64,000 nucleotides of DNA, from NCBI GenBank assembly GCA_950097015.1, contig CATNEN010000011.1, forward strand, positions 4,774,001 to 4,838,000, read 5' to 3'. Origin of the DNA: Macrostomum hystrix (Eukaryota > Animalia > Platyhelminthes). Below are positions 41,365 to 52,876 of this stretch, one piece after another (position 1 is the stretch's first letter; each line of letters opens with the position of its first letter). The translations under genes and the position numbers were made by a program. Under the pieces are notes generated by a model. It was not told where the DNA came from. It was given only the letters and a program-made list of their open reading frames with translations, and searched no databases.

Positions 41365-44300
41365 ATGGCAGAAAATATAAAAGTTGCAGTACGTGTCAGG
41401 CCATTCATATCCTTTTGGTTCCGTTTCTGTTTAAACAGCTTTAATCTCTTGAACGGTATGCCGCTATTATTAAGCAACATATGAGCTTGATAAGTATTAC
41501 TTTTTGCAAACTTAGTGATGCAGATAACTATCTATTGGAAGTTTGTGTACTAAGTGTAAATGTTTTTGCTACGTCATTTTTTTCATGCATACTTTACAGC
41601 GTTATATAGAGAGTAACAAAAGAACCTATAAGTTTTTATGATGGTGACTTAAAAACTTTGCACAACATGGTTTAGGAAAACATAGCTTAAAGGCGAGAAA
41701 TAAAAGTCAGGTTTCTCAAATTATTCTTGGCTTTAATGAAAACTTAAATTGCAGTTAAAGTGATGTAAAATTTGTTATTAGTCATTCGTTTTTAATGATC
41801 TAAGAATGCTCATATAGAGATTTATATTTTTATAATTTTACAAGTATTTATATCCTCTGCCATAACATACATAAAAATTACAAAGCGAGGAAGATCGATT
41901 AAAACACATTCCTTAACAATAATTTATTTGAACTGGTGCACAATGATCGAGAAATTGCACACAAAAGCAAAATGGTCATCGAGATGAAGGGCAACCAGAC
42001 AATCATTACAAGCAGCGAAGGCAGGAAAAACTCATTCGCATTCGATCATTCCTACTGGTCGCACGATGGCTTCAACACACTGCCCGATGGATACCTTGAG
42101 CCCGCCAGCCCGAAGTATGCCGATCAGGTTGGTTTGGAGAATTGTCAAGTGTATTTCTGTGACTGACTTAATCTCCCACCCACTCTCTCCCACCCCACTC
42201 TCTCCCACCCCACTCTCTCCCACCCCACTCTCTCCCACTCCACTCTCGCACCCACTCTCTCCCACCCACTCTCTCCCACCCCACTCTCTCCCACCCACTC
42301 TCTCCCACCCCACTCTCTCCCACCCACTCTCTCCCACCCCACTCTCTCCCACCCCACTCTCTCCCACCCCACTCTCTCCCACCCCACTCTCTCCCACCCA
42401 CTCTCTCCCACCCCACTCTCTCCCACCCACTCTCTCCCACCCCACTCTCTCCCACCCACTCTCTCCCACCCCACTCTCTCCCACCCCACTCTCTCCCACC
42501 CCACTCTCTCCCACCCATTCTCTCCCACCCCACTCTCTCCCACCCACTCTCTCCCACCCACTCTCTCCCACCCACTCTCTCCCACCCCACTCTCTCCCAC
42601 CCACTCTCTCCCACCCCACTCTCTCCCACCCCACTCTCTCCCACCCCACTCTCTCCCACCATCTCCCACCCCGCTCTCTCCCACCCACTCTCTCCCACCC
42701 ACTCTCTCCCACCCTACTGTTAATTCAAGCCCATAATCAGTGGCAGTTCAACTAAACAAAAAACACCCAGAAACGCGTATTCGAAGACCTTGGCCGGGGC
42801 ATTCTCAACAACGCTTGGAAAGGCTTCAACTGCAGCTTATTTGCCTACGGTCAGACTGGCAGCGGCAAGTCCTACTCAATCATTGGCTACGGCGCCAACA
42901 AGGGCATTGTGCCCATCACCTGCGAGGAATTGTTCGCTGGAATCGATGAGAAGCGGGCCAACGCCTCGGCTGATGACGAGTGGCAGGTAAGAGCTCTGTA
43001 AGGTATTGCCCGTGAAGGTATCTCCCGTAGCGGCGAATAAAAAAGGGAATCATCGCCCCAATCAAGCAAGGTATCGTCCTAATCTATTCGGAAATCGTCC
43101 TTATCAAACTGGGTATCGTCTCAACAAACATTTACTTTTGACCGTTACTTTCTAACATGAAATCGTTACTTTCTAACATGAAATCGTTACTTTCTAACAT
43201 GAAATCGTTACTTTCTAATATGACCTTGTTTTTTTTAAACCTAATTATTGGTACTTTCTAGTATCTTTCTACTTTGTATCGTTTCTTTCTAACAATACAT
43301 CGTTACTTTTTAATACAATATCGTTACTTTCTAAAACCATCCAGGTGTCGGTGAGCATGATTGAGATCTACAACGAAACAGTTCGCGACCTGCTTGTGAA
43401 GACTAGAGCGCCGAAGGGCGGGTTAAAAGTGCGCCAGCACCAAACTAAAGGTTTCTACGTTGAAGGCCTGTCCACAGCGCCAGTGAACAGCTACGCCCAA
43501 ATTGACGCCAAAATTGCCGAAGGCTCTCGAAACCGATCCGTAGCCGCCACCAACATGAACGCCACCAGTAGCCGCGCCCACACCATCGTGGCCATCAGCT
43601 TCGTGCAGAAGTCCAGCAACTCTGGCGGACAGAAAATGACCAAATCGTCTGTCATGAACCTGGTGGATCTGGCCGGCAGGTGGGACCTCCAATGACCACC
43701 TGTTCTTTCTCTGTCCTTCGTAACTAAATTAAACTACTACATGTAGAACTTGAAGAGATTAGAAGAGACTTTGTTAACTGAGACTGACTGGTGGGGTGGT
43801 TGGCGGTGCGATTAGAGAGTGCGCGACTGGGGTAATAGAGAAAATGGTAGAAAGTGAGAGGCGGACCAATCAGAAGGCGGCGAAGGGGCGGATGTAGAGA
43901 GCCAGACAGAAAATAGATCCATGTGACAAACAGGCAGTGAAGAATGGAAAGTAGACAGATGAATGGTGCAAAAAACTAGAAAGGAGATAATATTAAAAAC
44001 ACCCATTTTGAGTCGTGGGGACGCGCGAAAGGTGTTTAAAATCGTTGCCTGTAAAAAGTTGATTGATGATTTTTCTTAACTGTGCTCAAATCGTAATTTA
44101 CTATTTATCCATCTCCCCTCGCTCCCTCTCTCCCCTCGCTCCCTCTCTCCCCTCGCCCCCTCTCTCCCCTCGCTCCCTCTCTCCCCTCGCTCCCTCTCTC
44201 CCCTCGCCCCCTCTCTCCCCTCGCTCCCTCTCCCCACTCGCTCTCTCTCTCCCCTCGCTCACTCTCCTCCCTCGCTCCCTCTCTCCCCACTCGCTCCCTC

Positions 44301-47300
44301 TCCCCCCTCGCTCCCTCTCTCCCCTCGCTCCCTCTCTCCCCTCGCTCCCTCTCTCCCCTCGCTCCCTCTCTCCCCTCGCTCCCTCTCTCCCCTCGCTCCC
44401 TCTCTCCCCTCGCTCCCTCTCTCCCCTCGCTCCCTCTCTCCCTTCGCTACCTCTCTCCCCACCCGCTCCCTCTCTCCCCACTCGCTCCCTCTCTCCCCAC
44501 GCTCCCTCTCTCCCCTCGTTCCCTCTCTCCCCTCGTTCCCTCTCTCCCCACTCGTTCCCTCTCTCCCCTCGCACCTTCTCTCCCCACTCGCTCTCTCGCT
44601 CTATTTCTCCTTCTTTCTCCCTTTCTCAATCTATTCCACTCCCCCTGTCTCCCAATTATCTTTCTAAGCCAAGCACGACCATCTAAGTCAATCTGTTCTC
44701 CCTAACCAACGAACTCTCACGCAGCGAGCGTGTCGGCCTGACAGGCGCCGAAGGCGAGCGCATGAAGGAGGGTGCGGCAATCAACCTGTCGCTGTCTATG
44801 CTGGGCAATTGCATCAAGGCACTGGCGGACCAGGCGGCAGGCAATACAAAGGTCATTGGTAAGGAATCTTTCATTGCATCATTATTCGAATTGAAGCTGA
44901 AGAAGCCGATAAGAAACTATAACAAAACTACGCGCAAATACTTCTCATCTCAGTTCCCTTCCGTGACTCCGTGCTGACAAAACTGCTGCAGAATGCACTG
45001 GGTGGCAACAGCAAAACTGTCATGGTTAGTCTGAATTTGACATTATGCGAACGGTTAAATGTACTTTAATATTACTTTCCCGTCCTGTTCTAACAGGTGA
45101 CATTCCATTCTAACAGGTGACAGTCCATTCTAACAGGTGACATTCCATTCTAACAGGTGACATTCCATTCTAACAGGTGACATTCCATTCTAACAGGTGA
45201 CAGTCCATTTTAACAGGTGACATTCCATTCTAACAGGTGACAGTCCATTCTAACAGGTGACAGTCCATTCTAACAGGTGACATTCCATTCTAACAGGTGA
45301 AATTCCATTCTAACAGGTGACAGTCCATTCTAACAGGTGACAGTCCATTCTAACAGGTGACATTCCATTCTAACAGGTGGCATTCGATTCCAACAGGTGA
45401 CAGTCCATTCTAACAGGTGACAGTCCATTCTAACAGGTGACAGTCCATTCTAACAGGTGACAGTCCATTCTAACAGGTGACAGTCCATTCTAACAGGTGA
45501 CATTCCATTCTAACAGGTGACAGTCCATTCTAACAGGTGACAGTCCATTCTAACAGGTGACAGTCCATTCTAACAGGTGACATTCCATTCCAACAGGTGA
45601 CAGTCCATTCTAACAGGTGACAGTCCATTCTAACAGGTGACAGTCCATTCTAACAGGTGACATTCCATTCCAACAGGTGACAGTCCATTCTAACAGGTGA
45701 CAGTCCATTCTAACAGGTGACAGTCCATTCTAACAGGTGACAGTCCATTCTAACAGGTGACAGTCCATTCTAACAGGTGACATTACATTCTAACAGATGA
45801 CATTACATTCTAACAGGTGACATCCCATTCTAACAGGTGACAGTCCATTCTAACAGGTGACAGTCCATTCTAACAGGTGACAGTCCATTCTAACAGGTGA
45901 CAGTCCATTCTAACAGGTGGCATTCGATTCCAACAGGTGACAGTCCATTCTAACAGGTGACATTCGATTCCAACAGGTGACAGTCCATTCTAACAGGTGA
46001 CATTCCATTCCAACAGGTGACATTTCTGTCTAACTGAAAGCACCGAAATCTAACAGTTAATTTCCCTATCAATCGGGTCTGTCCATGACCAATGTTCAGT
46101 CAGTTTTAGAAAGATGTTGATAAATGATTTGGCCACCCATTTTCGTGCCAGATTGCCGCCCTGTCTCCAGCCGACATCAACTACGAGGAGACATTGTCAA
46201 CTCTGCGCTTTGCCGATCGAGCGAAATCAATCAAAACCAAAGCTGTAGTGAATGAGAGCCCCACTGATAAGCTGATCAGGGAGCTCCGAGAGGAGAATGC
46301 CAGATTGTTGGCAATGCTGAAGGCTGGCGGACGGCTGCCAACAGACGAACCGGGTGGCACCAGCGAGGAGGCTGAGCAGAAGCTGCGCGAGTTGATGAAG
46401 AAGAACGAAGCGGATATGGAGACCATGGAGAGGACTTGGGCTGACCGTCTGGCACAGGCGCAGGCCGAAGCCCAGCAGCAAATCAAGGAGCAGCAGGAGC
46501 GAAACGAAAGGAAGAAGAATGTGCCCCATCTGTGGAATCTGAATGCCGACGCATCATTGTCCGGGCTCATTGTGCACTTCTGCGATTCCGGCAGCCAGAC
46601 TGTCGGCCGCGAGGGCAACATTCAGCTGGCTGGTGTGAGGTGAGCACAGCAACCAATGGGATCAGGGATGAGAATGGATTGCTAATCTATCCCAGGCGAT
46701 CAGGGATGAGAATAGATTGCTAATCTATCCCAGGCGATCAGGGATGAGAATAGATTGCTAATCTATCCCAGGCGATCAGGGATGAGAATAGATTGCTAAT
46801 CTATCCCAGGCGATCAGGGATGAGAATAGATTGCTAATCTATCCCAGGCGATCAGGGATGAGAATAGATTGCTAATCTATCCCAGGCGATCAGGGATGAG
46901 AATAGATTGCTAATCTATCCCATGAGATCAGGGATGAGAATAGATTGCTAATCTATCCCATGAGATCAGGGATGAGAATAGATTGCTAATCTATCTCACC
47001 CGCAGCATCCAGCCGCGACACGCGGTGATTCGGAACGACAAAGGCAAGGTGACAGTGACTCCGTTGGAGACTGCGAAAGTCTACGTCAACGGTAAAGCTG
47101 TCACTGTGGAGACGCAGCTCCATCACAACGACCGGCTGCTGTTTGGCAACAACCACCTGTACATCTTCCATCACCCGGTGGACTATGCCAAGCTGCTAAA
47201 GGCCGGTAAGGAAGCTACTGTGGCCCATCCTAACTTTGAGGATGCTCAAGCTGAACTGGCTGCCAACTCCGGCGTCATGGGGTTGCTAGGCGACTCAGGA

Positions 47301-50157
47301 AAAAGAGTTGGAAGCGAGGGTGAGTCTGTCTGCGTCCGTATCTAACAGTTTTTGTCCGTATCTAACAGTTTGTGTCCGTATCTAACAGTTTGTGTCCGTA
47401 TCTAACAGTTTGTGTCCGTATCTAACAGTTTGTGTCCGTATCTAACAGTTTGTGTCCGTATCTAACAGTTTGTGTCCGTATCTAACAGTTTGTGTCCGTA
47501 TCTAACAGTTTTTGTCCGTATCTAACAGTTTTTTTCGTATCTAACATCATGTGTCCGAGTATCTAAAAGTCACCCAACATCACACAACTGTTCTAAAACT
47601 TGCAGACTACCTCCTACTCAAAGACGACCTTGTGCGGCTATTTCCCGAGGTTCAAGAGGCCAACGCCATGTCGCAGGAGATGAACAGGCGGGTGAAATTT
47701 GAGCTGCTGCTCATGTCGCCACAAGGTCGGGGTCTGAAGGAAGGCGAAGGCAGAACTGAGGTGTGTGAACCTGTTGTGATTGGTTAATGAGTCGATTATT
47801 AGTTTAGTGACGTGGGTCAGCGCTAATTTTCTTATTCCGCAGGTGTACGTCAAGCTAATCAATTTGGACAGCAACTGCGAGTTTCTATGGCCAAAAGACA
47901 AATTCGGCGATAGGAAATATCTGATGCGCGACATGTACAACAGCTTCATGGACGGCGACCCGGACTGGGAGCTTCCAGCTGAGCGGGACCCGTTCTTGGA
48001 GCCCTCGGACACCCCAGTTCTGGTTGGCACAAGCTTCGTCTACCTGGAGAGCCTGGCTCACCTCATCGAGATATCGCAGAGTTTCGCTGTCACCAATTAT
48101 CGCGGCGACGATCAGGGCAAGCTGGAGATCGAGATTGTGCCCTGCGACTCCAACTGGGCGGAGCAGAGGGACTCGTTCGCTGAGCCTGACCACATTGTTG
48201 GCAAGCCGCTCTACTTCAAAATAAAACTGCTAGCTGGCACTGACTTGCCGGCTAGATTCGCAAGCGTGAGTCACTTCAGACACCCACCCCACTCTATTAA
48301 CACCCACCCCACTCCACTAACACCCAACCCACTCCATTAACACATAACCCATGCACTCCACCCATTGCTTTAACATCCTTCTCATTCCATTAACACCCTC
48401 CCTATTCAACACCGACGCTATTCCATTAAAACCCTCCCCATTCCAATTAATACCCACCCCAGTCCATAAACACTCACCCAGAAGCACCAATCCATTTCCA
48501 TTAACACCCGTTCAACTAAAACCCCCTCCCCATTCCATTAGCACCCTGCACCTCATTCCATTTACACCCACCCCATTCCATAAACACGTACTCACCCTAT
48601 TCCAATAACACCCACCCCATTTCATCAACATCCACCCCATTTCGCAACACCTGCATAATTAAAAATCAGCATTCATTCGTTGGCGACCCATCATAAAAAA
48701 TCAAACTCCAAATAATTTGGCAGTTCTTCTGCCGCTACAAGTACTATCTGGAGGACCAGTACGCCGTGACACCTGAAGTTGACACCGGCAATAATCCCAA
48801 ATTTGATTTCGAAAAGAACTATTCAACAGTCACCGTAACCAAGCAGTTCATGGACTACCTGCAGCACTCCTACATCATCGTGGAGCTGTGGGGTCGTCAG
48901 CGCGACAATCGTCGAAAGCCTGCTGGCAAGTCGACGAACACGAAGGACGCGGCTAAAATTGTAGCCGAACCTGGCGTTGGTGCCGCTCCGGTAATTTGTT
49001 AATTCAAAAGCTTTCTAAAGCAGGTAAAATTTCAGATTTGTAATAAGAGATCATCGAAAATCATCTCAAAACTTCGCAGAAGGGCGGCCTGGACTCCACA
49101 GACGGCGGTGCAGGCGGCAGCGGCAGTGAAGACGACAGAAAATTAAAAGCCGAAATTGACACATTGAAGAAAGAGAAGGAGAGAGCCGATTTCAAAATTG
49201 TGAGCAGCCATTGCTGGATATAAATTAGTTTTAACTTTGCTTAAATTTACGATATAATAATCCCTAGGTTAGGTGGTAAATTTTAGTTAATATTCGTCAA
49301 AACTTAATATCTTAAAAACACAAATCTCTAAATGTAGACTTGTCCAACGCCAAATCAGAAACAAATTAACTTCTTATTAGAAGTTAAGCAAACGAGTTTT
49401 TATCGTTACTAATTGGTAAAACATTGATAATGCTTATGTGTCTAACATTTGCCTGATTGGTTCAATTGAAAATTCAAAAAAATTCTATAGAAAATCGCCT
49501 CTTACAGTTAAAGTATTTTATAAAAACACTCTAGTTTCTCTTCCCTTCAATCATTGCAGCAACAGCTACAGAAGATGCTTAACGAGGCCAGGAAAAATGG
49601 AGACGCCAAGATTGACGTGAGAAATTATTATAATTATTTTTTATAACGAGAATAATAAACTGAGGTTTGAAAACAGTTGCGTAGAAAAAAAATTTACGTG
49701 AACTAAAACAACGGAAAACACCGGAACTTTCGTTTCTATTCGAATTCTGATAAAGCAATATATATTTATACTCGTATGTATTCCAAAATCACATTTTAAT
49801 TTTTTCTTTTGAACACAACAAAAGTTTGTTTAAACTTTTGATAAAAATATACTTAAAAATGAATTTGCATTCACACATTTGGCTGTAAATTTTGTTTGGC
49901 ACAAAAAACAATTGGGAGCCGTCTAGAGTAAATGATAGTCCAACTCCTGGTGCTTTATTTTCGCCACTGATAACCCCTTTAAACAGGTGGATTCCATTGA
50001 TAAGACGCTTTCGGCCACCAGCCAGTCAACAAAACCGCCAACAACATCAAAGGGATCAAAGGGTGCCGCAGCGGCCAGAGCCAGCAGCCCAGCTGTGCAG
50101 TTGAAGCGAGACAGCGTGATGGGTCCGACAGTGTCACGGACCTGCGCACTGCAGTGA
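41365..50157 (+). CDS. KIF28P: Kinesin-3, KIF28/KLP-6-like, about 992 aa, 14 exons: 41365-41406, 41942-42127, 42771-42986, 43345-43679, 44725-44858, 44954-45024, 46152-46639, 47006-47319, 47606-47760, 47843-48265, 48724-48990, 49080-49199, 49560-49616, 49987-50157
   Basis: [15 protein letters not shown]-loop [54 protein letters not shown] domain (IQPRHAVI...[13 protein letters not shown]) and EANAMS. All exon phases are consistent (2979 nt). The family assignment within kinesin-3 is inferred from size and domain order. Confidence 0.88.
41407..41941 (+). other. U12-type (minor spliceosome) AT-AC intron, 535 nt, first coding intron of the kinesin
   Basis: 5' end ATATCCTTTT, branch site TTCCTTAAC at 41909-41917, 3' end GTGCAC. 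Removing it gives the conserved VRPF|NDRE. Confidence 0.93.
42174..42715. repeat. C-rich 14/15-bp repeat (CCCACTCTCTCCCAC)n in kinesin intron 2
   Basis: More than 30 units. Confidence 0.95.
43140..43335. repeat. Degenerate 21-bp repeat GAAATCGTTACTTTCTAACAT in kinesin intron 3
   Basis: About 4 clear units plus diverged units. Confidence 0.8.
44110..44600. repeat. C/T-rich repeat (CCCCTCGCTCCCTCTCT)n in kinesin intron 4
   Basis: About 17-19-bp variant units. Confidence 0.93.
45088..46022. repeat. 20-bp minisatellite TTCTAACAGGTGACAGTCCA in kinesin intron 6
   Basis: About 46 units. Confidence 0.97.
46661..46995. repeat. 38-bp minisatellite ATCAGGGATGAGAATAGATTGCTAATCTATCCCAGGCG in kinesin intron 7
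   Basis: About 9 units filling almost the whole intron; the last unit supplies TGCTAAT just before the real acceptor. Confidence 0.96.
47335..47546. repeat. 20-bp minisatellite GTCCGTATCTAACAGTTTGT in kinesin intron 8
   Basis: About 10 units. Confidence 0.95.
48285..48650. repeat. Degenerate C-rich ~21-bp repeat (CACTCCATTAACACCCACCC-like) in kinesin intron 10
   Basis: Recurrent CCATTAACACC motif. Confidence 0.75.
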
Positions 50158-50757: not shown

Positions 50758-50992
50758 TTTAATTAAAAATACTAAATACAATTTCAATTATTAGATGAAG
50801 CTATCATGCTTAAAGTATATGACTATAAGTTTAATCTAAGACATAAATCTGCTTTATAACTTCAGTTTTTTCTTCTGAATCTTTTTAAAAGAACTAATGG
50901 CGGCCATTTTGAAACCGTGACTGATAGTTCTTTTTTAAATAATCGCCTCGAAAAATATCGCTGAATATTTTAAAAGCAATTGTAAGCAATTA

Positions 50993-52746
50993 CGAGGGGT
51001 GTTTCAAAAGTAACGAGAATTTAGTCATAACTTTTTAATGGATAAACTTTTTAACTTGAAATTTTTACCCGATAATTTTGCAAATATGGACAGCACACAG
51101 CTTCAGTTGCAACTCTATCGCTCTACATGCACTAGTGAAATCTCACATTAAAGTCCAGACCTCGAGATTAAAAATTACGATTTTTGTCTGTGGTCTATTT
51201 ACCTGAGAACTTGCTTAGAACTTGAAAACTGCTAATGATGCTGCTGATGCACTCAGCTGCTTCTGATACTGTCTCCGGTGTCTGCTGTTTATGGGCAAAG
51301 TTGCCTAGGAATTTTTGTTTTTTAAGCTGCATAGGCTGCTCAAAATTGCAAATGCTTGACTGAGAGACTTGACTGAAAACTGCTTTCAAGTGAGACTATG
51401 GAACGACCGAAAGATCATTCAGAAATTGGATCAAAGGAAGGACAACGGCATTTTATCGCTGGTCTGGTTCAACTTGGAAAGAAGCCATGCGATATCGCTC
51501 GGGACCTGAACCAGGCATTTGGAGATCAGGCACTATCGCAAGCGCGGGTTTATGCTCACTGCAAGGCGTTCCGCGAGGGTGCTACAGGATGTGGTGACGC
51601 GCCGAGGTCAGGTCGCCCCCGCACGTCAACGGATGACAACAGCAAACAGATTGTCCGTGATTACCTCTGCGCCAATCCTTCTGCCACATTGCGTGAAGTT
51701 GAGGAGGTCTGTAGCATCTCCATTGCTTCTGTGAGCCGCATCCTCAAGGAAATAAACTGGTCGAGAGTCTGTGCCAAGTGGGTGCCGCGTGAGTTGACCC
51801 TGGACCACAAAAGAAAGCGAATTCAATGTGCAACGGAGAACTTGCAGTTGTGGCAGCAACTTGGTGATCAGGAGTTTAAACGACTTCTCATCAGTATTGA
51901 TGAGACACCACTGCCAATGTTTAATCCACTGACTAAGCAGCAGTCCATGCAGTGGGGGCCCAGGGGCCGTCAGCCGCACACAAAGCCAATGAAGTCGGCA
52001 TGGACACGCAACATCATGTGCACCATGTGGTTTGAGGCCTGTGGGGTTCTGATGGTCGACTACCTGCCAGACAAGGCCACCATCAATGCTGCATACGTGC
52101 AAGATCAAGTTGCTCGTCTGCGTGAAGTCATCCTCCAGAAGCGACGCATCATGCGCGCCAGGCCCTTCATCTTGTGGGACAACGCTCGCCCTCACGTCGC
52201 CGCGGCCACCACAAGGAAAGTGGAAGAGCTCGGCTTTCGGCTGCTTAATCATCCACCTTATTCACCAGACCTCGCCATTGCTGACTTTCACTTGTTTGGA
52301 GTAATGAAGAAGCCCATGCGAGGTCGCGTCTTCACCAGTCGACAGGAAGTCATTGCGGCGGCCAACGAATCTCTCCATGCGCTGCCTGCGAGTTTTTGGG
52401 GGGAGGGAATCGACAAACTGCTGCATCGCTATGAGAAATGTATCCAGCTCGATGGCAGCTTTGTGGAGCGTGCTGAAATCGCTGAAGAAATGGACGAAGG
52501 CGCTGATTTTTGACACAACAAACACGTTCACCTGTTCACTATTTTCCACAGACAAAAATCGTAATTTTTAATCTCGAGGTCTGGACTTCAATGTGCGATT
52601 TCACTGGTGCATGTAGACCGACAGGGTTGCAACTGAAGCTGTGTGCTGTCCATATTTGCAAAATTATCGGGTAAAAATTTCAAGTTAAAAAGTTTATCCA
52701 TTAAAAAGTTATGACTAAATTCTCGTTACTTTTGAAACACCCCTCG
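50993..52746 (+). mobile_element. Full-length mariner (DD34D) DNA transposon, 1754 bp, with 201-bp TIRs (50993-51193 and 52546-52746) and TA target duplication
   Basis: TA at 50991-50992 and 52747-52748. The termini CGAGGGGTGTTTCAAAAGTAACGAG are perfectly inverted. One internal transposase ORF. Confidence 0.96.
51398..52513 (+). CDS. Mariner transposase, 371 aa, apparently intact
   Basis: N-terminal HTH, WVPREL, catalytic SIDETPL / WDNARPH / YSPDLAIAD with 34 residues between the second and third Asp. Confidence 0.96.
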   Translation: MERPKDHSEIGSKEGQRHFIAGLVQLGKKPCDIARDLNQAFGDQALSQARVYAHCKAFREGATGCGDAPRSGRPRTSTDDNSKQIVRDYLCANPSATLREVEEVCSISIASVSRILKEINWSRVCAKWVPRELTLDHKRKRIQCATENLQLWQQLGDQEFKRLLISIDETPLPMFNPLTKQQSMQWGPRGRQPHTKPMKSAWTRNIMCTMWFEACGVLMVDYLPDKATINAAYVQDQVARLREVILQKRRIMRARPFILWDNARPHVAAATTRKVEELGFRLLNHPPYSPDLAIADFHLFGVMKKPMRGRVFTSRQEVIAAANESLHALPASFWGEGIDKLLHRYEKCIQLDGSFVERAEIAEEMDEGADF

Positions 52747-52876
52747 TACTTACTGCTTAAAATACACCTAAAGCATTTTATTTTTCTAAATAGTATATTA
52801 TTAGAAATACTTAATTGAAAGCTAAGATGAAAAAAAAATTGTTTAAATTCAATGGTCAGCCTAAAATTGAGACGAG

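What the first reader, a model, noticed from the sequence alone, without database searches (positions are those of the whole stretch)
41365..41950. AT-AC minor-spliceosome intron in the kinesin motor start
No GT-AG pair can join [14 protein letters not shown] to NDREIAH. The intervening 535 nt begin ATATCCTTTT, carry a perfect U12 branch site TTCCTTAAC 24 nt before the end, and finish AC. Splicing restores the kinesin-3 motif RPFNxRE. It shows that this lineage has a working U11/U12 spliceosome, gives a rate-limiting control point on the motor, and would be missed by standard gene predictors. Unlike most other long introns of this gene it has no minisatellite.
Basis: partly seen in the sequence, partly recalled or inferred. 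Interest (0 to 1): 0.75.

Follow-up and report, generated by a model that had tools for sequence, protein, structure and literature searches.

The report
Conserved AT-AC minor intron in KIF28
The flagged stretch is a genuine rare-type (U12, minor-spliceosome) intron at the start of a flatworm kinesin motor gene; the same intron sits at this spot in corals, lancelets and snails, so it is ordinary apart from a branch signal that lies unusually far from the intron's end.

Summary
Exon 1 (41365-41406) ends with the RPF codons. A 535-nt intron (41407-41941) starts ATATCCTTT, carries TTCCTTAAC at 41909-41917 and ends AC. Exon 2 starts NDRE at 41942. Each 9-mer occurs only once in the 64-kb window.

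The gene is a KIF28/KLP-6-type kinesin-3 of a Macrostomum-type flatworm. The same phase-0 U12 intron is present in:
- the Macrostomum lignano ortholog, whose GenBank model is built from RNA;
- two paralogs in this genome;
- Porites and Branchiostoma (AT-AC) and Lymnaea (GT-AG U12 subtype);
- three unnamed eukaryotes.

The genome encodes U11, U12 and U6atac above Rfam thresholds, plus a sub-threshold U4atac candidate that pairs with the U6atac.

So this is a real, ancient minor intron and a new member of a known kind. Flatworm minor splicing is already reported, and this scan has already confirmed other U12 introns on other DNA of this genome.

One oddity: the branch motif ends 24-38 nt before the 3' splice site in all five Macrostomum copies, against 9-10 nt in six outgroup copies. 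Nearer AC dinucleotides are skipped.

I found no transcript of this species, and the "rate-limiting control" idea is untested.

The parts
41365..41406 (+). Exon 1 coding part: start codon plus 13 codons ([14 protein letters not shown]), the first beta strand of the kinesin motor
   Evidence: Identical to the first 14 residues of the M. lignano ortholog P0278. In alignment A5 conservation begins at the ATG.
41407..41941 (+). U12-type AT-AC intron, 535 nt, phase 0
   Evidence: The same position is occupied by U12-type introns in M. lignano, Porites, Branchiostoma, Lymnaea and unnamed taxa. No tandem repeat inside.
41407..41415 (+). Minor 5' splice site ATATCCTTT (pairs with U11, then U6atac)
   Evidence: Only copy in the window. 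Identical in M. lignano. Complementary to the 5' end of the genome's U11 and to the AAGGAGA box of its U6atac.
41909..41917 (+). Minor branch-point sequence TTCCTTAAC; presumed branch A at 41915 or 41916
   Evidence: Only copy in the window. The core CCTTAAC is conserved in M. lignano while the intron interior is not. Complementary to the GUAAGGAA box of the genome's U12. Actual use as the branch point is inferred, not shown.
41932..41933 (+). Proximal AC, 16 nt after the branch motif, apparently skipped
   Evidence: Read. Use of this AC would add 8 nt, shift the frame and reach a stop after 17 codons (my reading of the sequence). The orthologous RNA-based M. lignano junction is at the distal TGCAC site.
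41940..41941 (+). 3' terminal AC of the intron (context TGCAC|AAT)
   Evidence: The same TGCAC| or TGACAC| end occurs in the four other Macrostomum copies.
41942..42128 (+). Exon 2 (NDREIAH ... YADQ), followed by an ordinary GT donor at 42129
   Evidence: 73% identical to residues 15-76 of M. lignano P0278. The intron after YADQ is shared with many taxa.
41365..50157 (+). Whole KIF28/KLP-6-like kinesin-3 gene. About 13 coding exons by homology, ending in a CaaX-like CALQ
   Evidence: Exon-by-exon blastx against P0278 and P0226. Pfam Kinesin, Kinesin_assoc, FHA and KIF1B on single exons.

Best explanation
41407-41941 is a genuine minor-class (U12-dependent) AT-AC intron, phase 0, between codons 14 and 15 of a KIF28/KLP-6-type kinesin-3 gene in a Macrostomum-type flatworm.

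Inferred mechanism, following the established pathway:
1. The U11/U12 di-snRNP binds the 5' splice site ATATCCTTT (U11) and the branch sequence TTCCTTAAC (U12, with a bulged A).
2. U4atac/U6atac.U5 joins, and U6atac replaces U11 at the 5' site.
3. The intron is excised at the AC at 41940-41941, fusing RPF to NDRE and completing the first strand of the motor domain.
4. If the intron is retained, the frame runs into a stop after 25 intron codons, so only spliced mRNA can make the motor.

The intron is ancient, at least as old as the cnidarian-bilaterian ancestor, and was inherited vertically. Its one non-standard trait, shared by all Macrostomum copies, is a long and variable gap (24-38 nt) between the branch motif and the 3' splice site.
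For: - Sequence: perfect consensus 5' site and branch site, AC end, correct frame. No GT/GC-AG alternative restores the motif.
- Congener: the M. lignano ortholog P0278 starts with the same 14 residues followed by DDRE. Its locus L011 has ATATCCTTTT ... TGCCTTAAC ... AC at the same codon boundary. That GenBank annotation was built from RNA-seq and transcriptome assemblies only (PMC5730564), so the orthologous junction is RNA-derived.
- Between the two species the exon, the 5' site, the CCTTAAC core and the TGCAC end are conserved, while the intron interior is not.
- Orthologs have a U12-type intron at the identical position: Porites lutea and Branchiostoma lanceolatum (AT-AC), Lymnaea stagnalis (GTATCCTTC ... 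AG), and three unnamed eukaryotes. One taxon lacks the intron and reads straight through with nearly the same codons.
- Two paralogs in this genome carry it too. They are the only other genome-wide matches to R-P-F codons followed by RTATCCTT.
- Machinery: U12 scores 85.7 bits, U11 70.4 bits and U6atac 47.5 bits, all full length and above the gathering scores, with intact recognition boxes.
- A U4atac candidate scores 35.6 bits. It has a 5' stem-loop, an Sm site and a 5' end that pairs with the U6atac, including a compensatory G:C change.
Against: - No transcript of this species spanning 41406/41942 was found. The four large protein searches returned nothing closer than the M. lignano ortholog.
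- U4atac is below Rfam's gathering score.
- The branch motif lies 24 nt from the 3' site, about twice the 11-13 nt optimum given in PMC3584512. A nearer AC (41932-41933) must be skipped.
- The branch point itself is not mapped.
- Minor-spliceosome-specific proteins were not shown; the PDCD7 search was uninformative.
Confidence: 0.93

Rival explanations
1. The intron is an AT-AC intron removed by the major (U2-type) spliceosome, as a few vertebrate AT-AC introns are.
For: The long branch-to-3' distance (24 nt; 28-38 nt in the other Macrostomum copies) is more typical of U2-type introns.
Against: - The 5' site is the full U12 consensus ATATCCTTT, not the ATAAGT-like U2 form.
- A U12 branch motif is kept in all five Macrostomum copies and in all outgroups.
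- There is no polypyrimidine tract in the spacer (50% pyrimidines).
- The minor snRNAs are present with intact pairing boxes.
Confidence: 0.03
2. Exon 1 is not used. The mRNA starts downstream (for example by spliced-leader trans-splicing near exon 2) and translation begins at an internal Met, so 41407-41941 is upstream or outron sequence rather than a cis-spliced intron.
For: - Macrostomum uses spliced-leader trans-splicing widely (PMC5730564; scan note s1-339223).
- The M. lignano paralog model P0297 does begin at an internal Met of exon 2.
Against: - Exon 1 encodes the conserved first strand of the motor ([11 protein letters not shown]). It is kept intact with its ATG in all five Macrostomum copies and in every outgroup.
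- The RNA-based M. lignano ortholog model includes it.
- There is no AG acceptor just upstream of 41942.
Confidence: 0.03
3. The locus is a decaying paralog, or the splice signals are a chance look-alike in AT-rich DNA.
For: The intron is AT-rich (about 33% GC around it), and short motifs are common in such DNA.
Against: - All exons found by homology are open and 48-89% identical to M. lignano P0278 across the whole protein, down to the CaaX-like end.
- Both 9-mers are unique in the window and sit at the exact places needed.
- The genome-wide pattern search hits only the three kinesin paralogs.
Confidence: 0.01

Closest known systems
Canonical AT-AC U12-type introns of animals, as summarised in Turunen et al. 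2013 (PMC3584512)
   Same: ATATCCTTT 5' site, TTCCTTAAC branch site, AC terminus, no polypyrimidine tract, single minor intron among ordinary GT-AG introns, deep positional conservation.
   Different: The branch motif ends 24 nt from the 3' site instead of about 9-11 nt (optimum branch-A distance 11-13 nt). A nearer AC is skipped.
The orthologous intron 1 of KIF28/KLP-6 genes in Macrostomum lignano (NIVC01004248.1), Branchiostoma lanceolatum, Porites lutea and Lymnaea stagnalis
   Same: Identical position and phase (RPF|N), U12-type 5' site and branch motif. It is the same intron by descent.
   Different: Outgroups have a 9-nt spacer. Lymnaea has switched to the GT-AG subtype. M. lignano has an even longer spacer (33 nt). 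No paper I could search mentions this intron.
Lineage-specific remodelling of the minor splicing system in Physarum polycephalum (bioRxiv 10.1101/2020.10.12.336362)
   Same: A precedent for a whole lineage changing a cis rule of U12 introns.
   Different: In Physarum the branch motif and the U12 snRNA co-changed while the spacing stayed tight (A at -12 to -10). Here the motif and the U12 box are canonical and it is the spacing that differs.

Membership tests
U12-type (minor-class) intron, AT-AC subtype | 5' splice site matching /ATATCCTT(T) | tested here: met
   ATATCCTTT at 41407-41415, the only copy in the window.
U12-type (minor-class) intron, AT-AC subtype | Branch-point sequence TTCCTTRAC near the 3' end | tested here: met
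   TTCCTTAAC at 41909-41917, the only copy in the window. Inside the -40/-55 search ranges used by published classifiers.
U12-type (minor-class) intron, AT-AC subtype | Short branch-to-3' splice site spacing (optimum 11-13 nt) | tested here: not met
   The motif ends 24 nt before the 3' site, so the branch A is at about -25/-26. The other Macrostomum copies have 28-38 nt and six outgroup copies 9-10 nt. This is a typical property rather than a strict definition, so membership is not overturned.
U12-type (minor-class) intron, AT-AC subtype | AC at the 3' end and no polypyrimidine tract | tested here: met
   AC at 41940-41941. The 24-nt spacer is 50% pyrimidine.
U12-type (minor-class) intron, AT-AC subtype | Genome encodes U11, U12, U4atac and U6atac | tested here: inconclusive
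   U12 85.7 bits, U11 70.4 bits and U6atac 47.5 bits are above the gathering scores. The U4atac candidate scores only 35.6 bits against 53, but it is full length, has an Sm site and pairs with the U6atac.
U12-type (minor-class) intron, AT-AC subtype | Same position occupied by U12-type introns in orthologs | tested here: met
   M. lignano, Porites, Branchiostoma, Lymnaea and three unnamed taxa.
U12-type (minor-class) intron, AT-AC subtype | Junction seen in RNA, and removal dependent on the minor spliceosome | not testable with these tools
   Only indirect evidence: the M. lignano ortholog model, built from RNA, uses the orthologous junction. No transcript of this species was found.
KIF28/KLP-6 subfamily of kinesin-3 | N-terminal kinesin motor followed by Kinesin_assoc, FHA and KIF1B domains; closest named relatives are KIF28/KLP-6 | tested here: met
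   Pfam on single exons. Named hits are KIF28/KIF28P/kinesin-like protein 6. Best match is M. lignano 'Kinesin-like protein 6' P0278.
U2-type AT-AC intron | Major-type 5' site (ATAAGT-like) and a polypyrimidine tract | tested here: not met
   The 5' site is the U12 consensus and there is no pyrimidine tract.

The most novel reading that the evidence does not exclude
Macrostomum flatworms have relaxed or changed the rule by which the minor spliceosome picks the 3' splice site. The branch motif sits 24-38 nt upstream at variable distance. Nearer AC dinucleotides are ignored, and the site used always reads TG(A)CAC. This suggests sequence-based rather than distance-based 3' site choice.

In this gene family the pattern is 5 of 5 Macrostomum introns against 0 of 6 outgroup orthologs. 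Unchecked notes from this scan report distal branch signals in several other U12 introns of the same genome.
Probability: 0.5. Interest if true: 0.55.

Novelty: new member of a known kind. Interest (0 to 1): 0.3.

Why it matters
In itself it matters little. It adds one more deeply conserved minor intron (KIF28/KLP-6 intron 1, not mentioned in any paper I could search). It also confirms that this flatworm genome carries the minor snRNAs.

It is useful for annotation. Without the AT-AC junction the gene loses its start codon and first motor strand, as happened to one M. lignano paralog model.

The more interesting by-product is a clean orthologous comparison. It shows that Macrostomum tolerates branch-to-acceptor gaps two to four times the usual length in U12 introns. 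If that is general, Macrostomum is a natural system for asking how the minor spliceosome measures or recognises its 3' splice site.

Tried and rejected
- Transcript of this species: the representative search with exon 2 and three word searches found orthologs but nothing closer than M. lignano (72-89% identity). The junction in this species therefore stays unproven by RNA.
- To reach full-length proteins despite the length filter I aligned single exon translations, each by reference as its own row, to a full-length homolog. Alignments A1-A3 were misaligned by MAFFT and were discarded. A4 was used.
The only joining was an in-script frame test of candidate donor-acceptor pairs.
- GT/GC-AG alternatives were all rejected.
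- U4atac was not found at the default threshold. A candidate appeared only at a relaxed threshold.
- The PDCD7 (U11-59K) Pfam search in the genome returned nothing, and the controls also returned nothing, so it is uninformative.
- Sponge ortholog: no gene record. The ctenophore Bolinopsis gene is intronless and so uninformative for dating.
- Physarum-like TTTGA proximal branch motif: present at -11 in the window but not in the M. lignano ortholog. Rejected as a shared alternative branch site.
- Literature: no paper combines Macrostomum with U12/AT-AC, or KIF28 with minor intron. The supplement of PMC10639083 held here does not list flatworm species.

Full report
**Observation.**
- An ATG at 41365 opens 14 codons, [14 protein letters not shown].
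- The next base begins ATATCCTTTT.
- TTCCTTAAC lies at 41909-41917.
- The last two intron bases (41940-41941) are AC, and 41942 onward reads NDREIAH...YADQ up to an ordinary GT donor at 42129.
- The intron is 535 nt.

Both 9-mers are unique in the 64-kb window on either strand, and GTATCCTTT is absent. I tested every GT/GC donor and every AG acceptor in the region in a script. The in-frame combinations all delete or replace the RPF-N-x-RE motif, so no major-type pair can make the motor's first strand. TRF confirms the side remark. Seven other introns of the gene are filled with 15-38-nt minisatellites, while this one has none.

**What the gene is.** Single exons, searched apart by reference, hit Pfam Kinesin, Kinesin_assoc, FHA and KIF1B. 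Named relatives are KIF28/KIF28P/kinesin-like protein 6.

The best match to every exon is Macrostomum lignano BOX15_Mlig019522g3 (P0278, 1000 aa). Most exons are 69-89% identical, falling to 48-61% in the last three. Its first 14 residues are identical to exon 1 and are followed by DDRE. That fits an earlier scan note calling this a Macrostomum-type flatworm (s1-339223). The assembly is 220 Mb in 42 contigs. By homology the gene runs from 41365 to a stop at 50157.

**Comparative evidence.** The M. lignano locus (L011) has the same architecture: exon 1, then ATATCCTTTT, a 602-nt intron, TGCCTTAAC, and an AC before GATGACCGAGAA. In the pairwise alignment the exon, the 5' site, the CCTTAAC core and the TGCAC end are conserved, and the interior is not. 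The M. lignano GenBank annotation was derived only from RNA-seq and transcriptome assemblies (PMC5730564), so the orthologous junction is RNA-based.

| Source | Position | Intron signals |
|---|---|---|
| Porites lutea (coral) | RPF\|N, phase 0 | ATATCCTTTT ... TTCCTTAAC + 9 nt ... AC |
| Branchiostoma lanceolatum | RPF\|N, phase 0 | ATATCCTTTT ... AACCTTAAC + 9 nt ... AC |
| Lymnaea stagnalis | RPF\|N, phase 0 | GTATCCTTC ... AACCTTAAC + 9 nt ... AG (subtype switch) |
| Three unnamed eukaryotes (metagenome or Logan contigs) | same position | U12-type signals |
| One unnamed taxon | same position | no intron; reads through with almost the same codons |
| Bolinopsis (ctenophore) | whole gene | intronless |

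The intron therefore dates at least to the cnidarian-bilaterian ancestor.

Within this genome two paralogs (on contigs C3 and C33) also carry it. A degenerate pattern for R-P-F codons followed by RTATCCTT hits only these three loci in 220 Mb.

**Machinery.** Rfam models find single full-length U12 (85.7 bits), U11 (70.4 bits) and U6atac (47.5 bits) genes, all above the gathering scores. The boxes that pair with the branch site and the 5' site are unchanged from consensus.

U4atac was not found at default settings. At a relaxed threshold one full-length candidate appears (35.6 bits against a cut-off of 53). It has the 5' stem-loop, an Sm site and a 5' end that pairs with the U6atac candidate, including a compensatory change. 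I treat it as probable, not proven.

**Mechanism.** The pathway is inferred from the established minor-spliceosome route. U11 and U12 bind the 5' site and the branch motif, U6atac takes over the 5' site, and the exons are joined at 41406|41942. Retention would end the frame after 25 intron codons (sequence), so splicing is obligatory for the protein. Whether it is rate-limiting is not addressed by any result here. That idea rests only on mammalian work cited in PMC3584512.

**The oddity.** Reviews give 11-13 nt as the optimal branch-to-3' distance, and classifiers speak of a well-defined distance constraint (PMC3584512; PMC11347168). The distances from the end of the branch motif to the 3' site are:

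| Copy | Distance (nt) |
|---|---|
| This window | 24 |
| Paralog on C3 | 28 |
| Paralog on C33 | 38 |
| M. lignano ortholog | 33 |
| M. lignano paralog | 29 |
| Six outgroup copies | 9-10 |

In each Macrostomum copy earlier AC dinucleotides are skipped. In the window the AC at 41932-41933 would shift the frame. The used site always reads TG(A)CAC. The last 14 nt of the M. lignano intron contain no A except in the terminal AC, so a proximal cryptic branch is not available there.

The five copies are related by duplication, so they are not independent. The spread of distances still argues for a relaxed constraint. Other notes of this scan describe distal branch signals in further U12 introns of the same genome (prospero, ESRP, Rab6, Cav3 and others). 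I did not check those loci. One of them (s1-085144) proposes that the first matching dinucleotide is chosen, which does not hold for this intron.

**Limits.**
- No transcript of this species was recovered.
- The branch point is not mapped.
- Minor-specific proteins were not shown (uninformative).
Exons were handled apart by reference, and only the frame test joined pieces inside a script.
- No contig seen looked human.

**Verdict.** This is a real, ancient AT-AC minor intron in a KIF28-type kinesin. It is ordinary in kind and already implicit in public gene models of relatives. This scan has confirmed the same class of intron before on other DNA of this genome. The distal branch signal is the only feature worth following.

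Noticed in passing
window 42172-42718, 43143-43334, 44112-44585, 45088-46022, 46660-46995, 47334-47570, 48280-48641: Nearly every GT-AG intron of the kinesin gene is filled by a minisatellite (periods 15-38, up to 47 copies). Three arrays with different units share a TCTAACA core that looks like a major-type branch/acceptor signal. The M. lignano ortholog has a (TCTA)n array in intron 2.
   Followed up: partly
window 50143-50157: The kinesin ends in a CaaX-like box (CALQ, then stop). Lymnaea (CLLQ), a sea urchin KIF28P (CSIM) and a protist homolog (CAVM) end the same way, which suggests that KIF28/KLP-6 motors are prenylated.
   Followed up: no
window 50985-52754: An intact-looking mariner/Tc1-type DNA transposon just downstream of the kinesin gene. 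It has 209-nt terminal inverted repeats (96% complementary) around a 371-aa open transposase (Pfam Transposase_1, DDE_3, HTH).
   Followed up: partly
L020 (M. lignano NIVC01002956.1) 2159-2958: The GenBank model of an M. lignano KIF28 paralog (P0297) starts at an internal Met of exon 2. Upstream lies an unannotated exon 1 ([14 protein letters not shown]) followed by ATATCCTTTT ... TTTCTTAAC + 29 nt ... AC, so the model missed the minor intron.
   Followed up: yes
G000 C3:7809438-7810080 (L017/L021) and C33:2614326-2615525 (L018/L023): Two further KIF28-like paralogs in this genome keep the same AT-AC intron. Their branch motifs are TTCTTTAAC (28 nt from the 3' site) and TTCCTTAAC (38 nt).
   Followed up: yes
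G000 C34:7129766-7129911 (L015, minus strand): A probable U4atac gene that scores below Rfam's gathering threshold (35.6 against 53 bits). Its 5' end pairs with the U6atac candidate through a compensatory G:C change.
   Followed up: partly
G000 C11:4653464-4653562 (L001): The single U6atac gene lies on the same contig, about 120 kb upstream of the window.
   Followed up: no
L012 (Lymnaea), L007 (Logan SRR13325274), L019 (Bolinopsis): Fates of the same ancestral intron elsewhere: switched to the GT-AG U12 subtype in Lymnaea, precisely lost in an unnamed short-intron eukaryote, and the whole gene intronless in the ctenophore Bolinopsis.
   Followed up: partly
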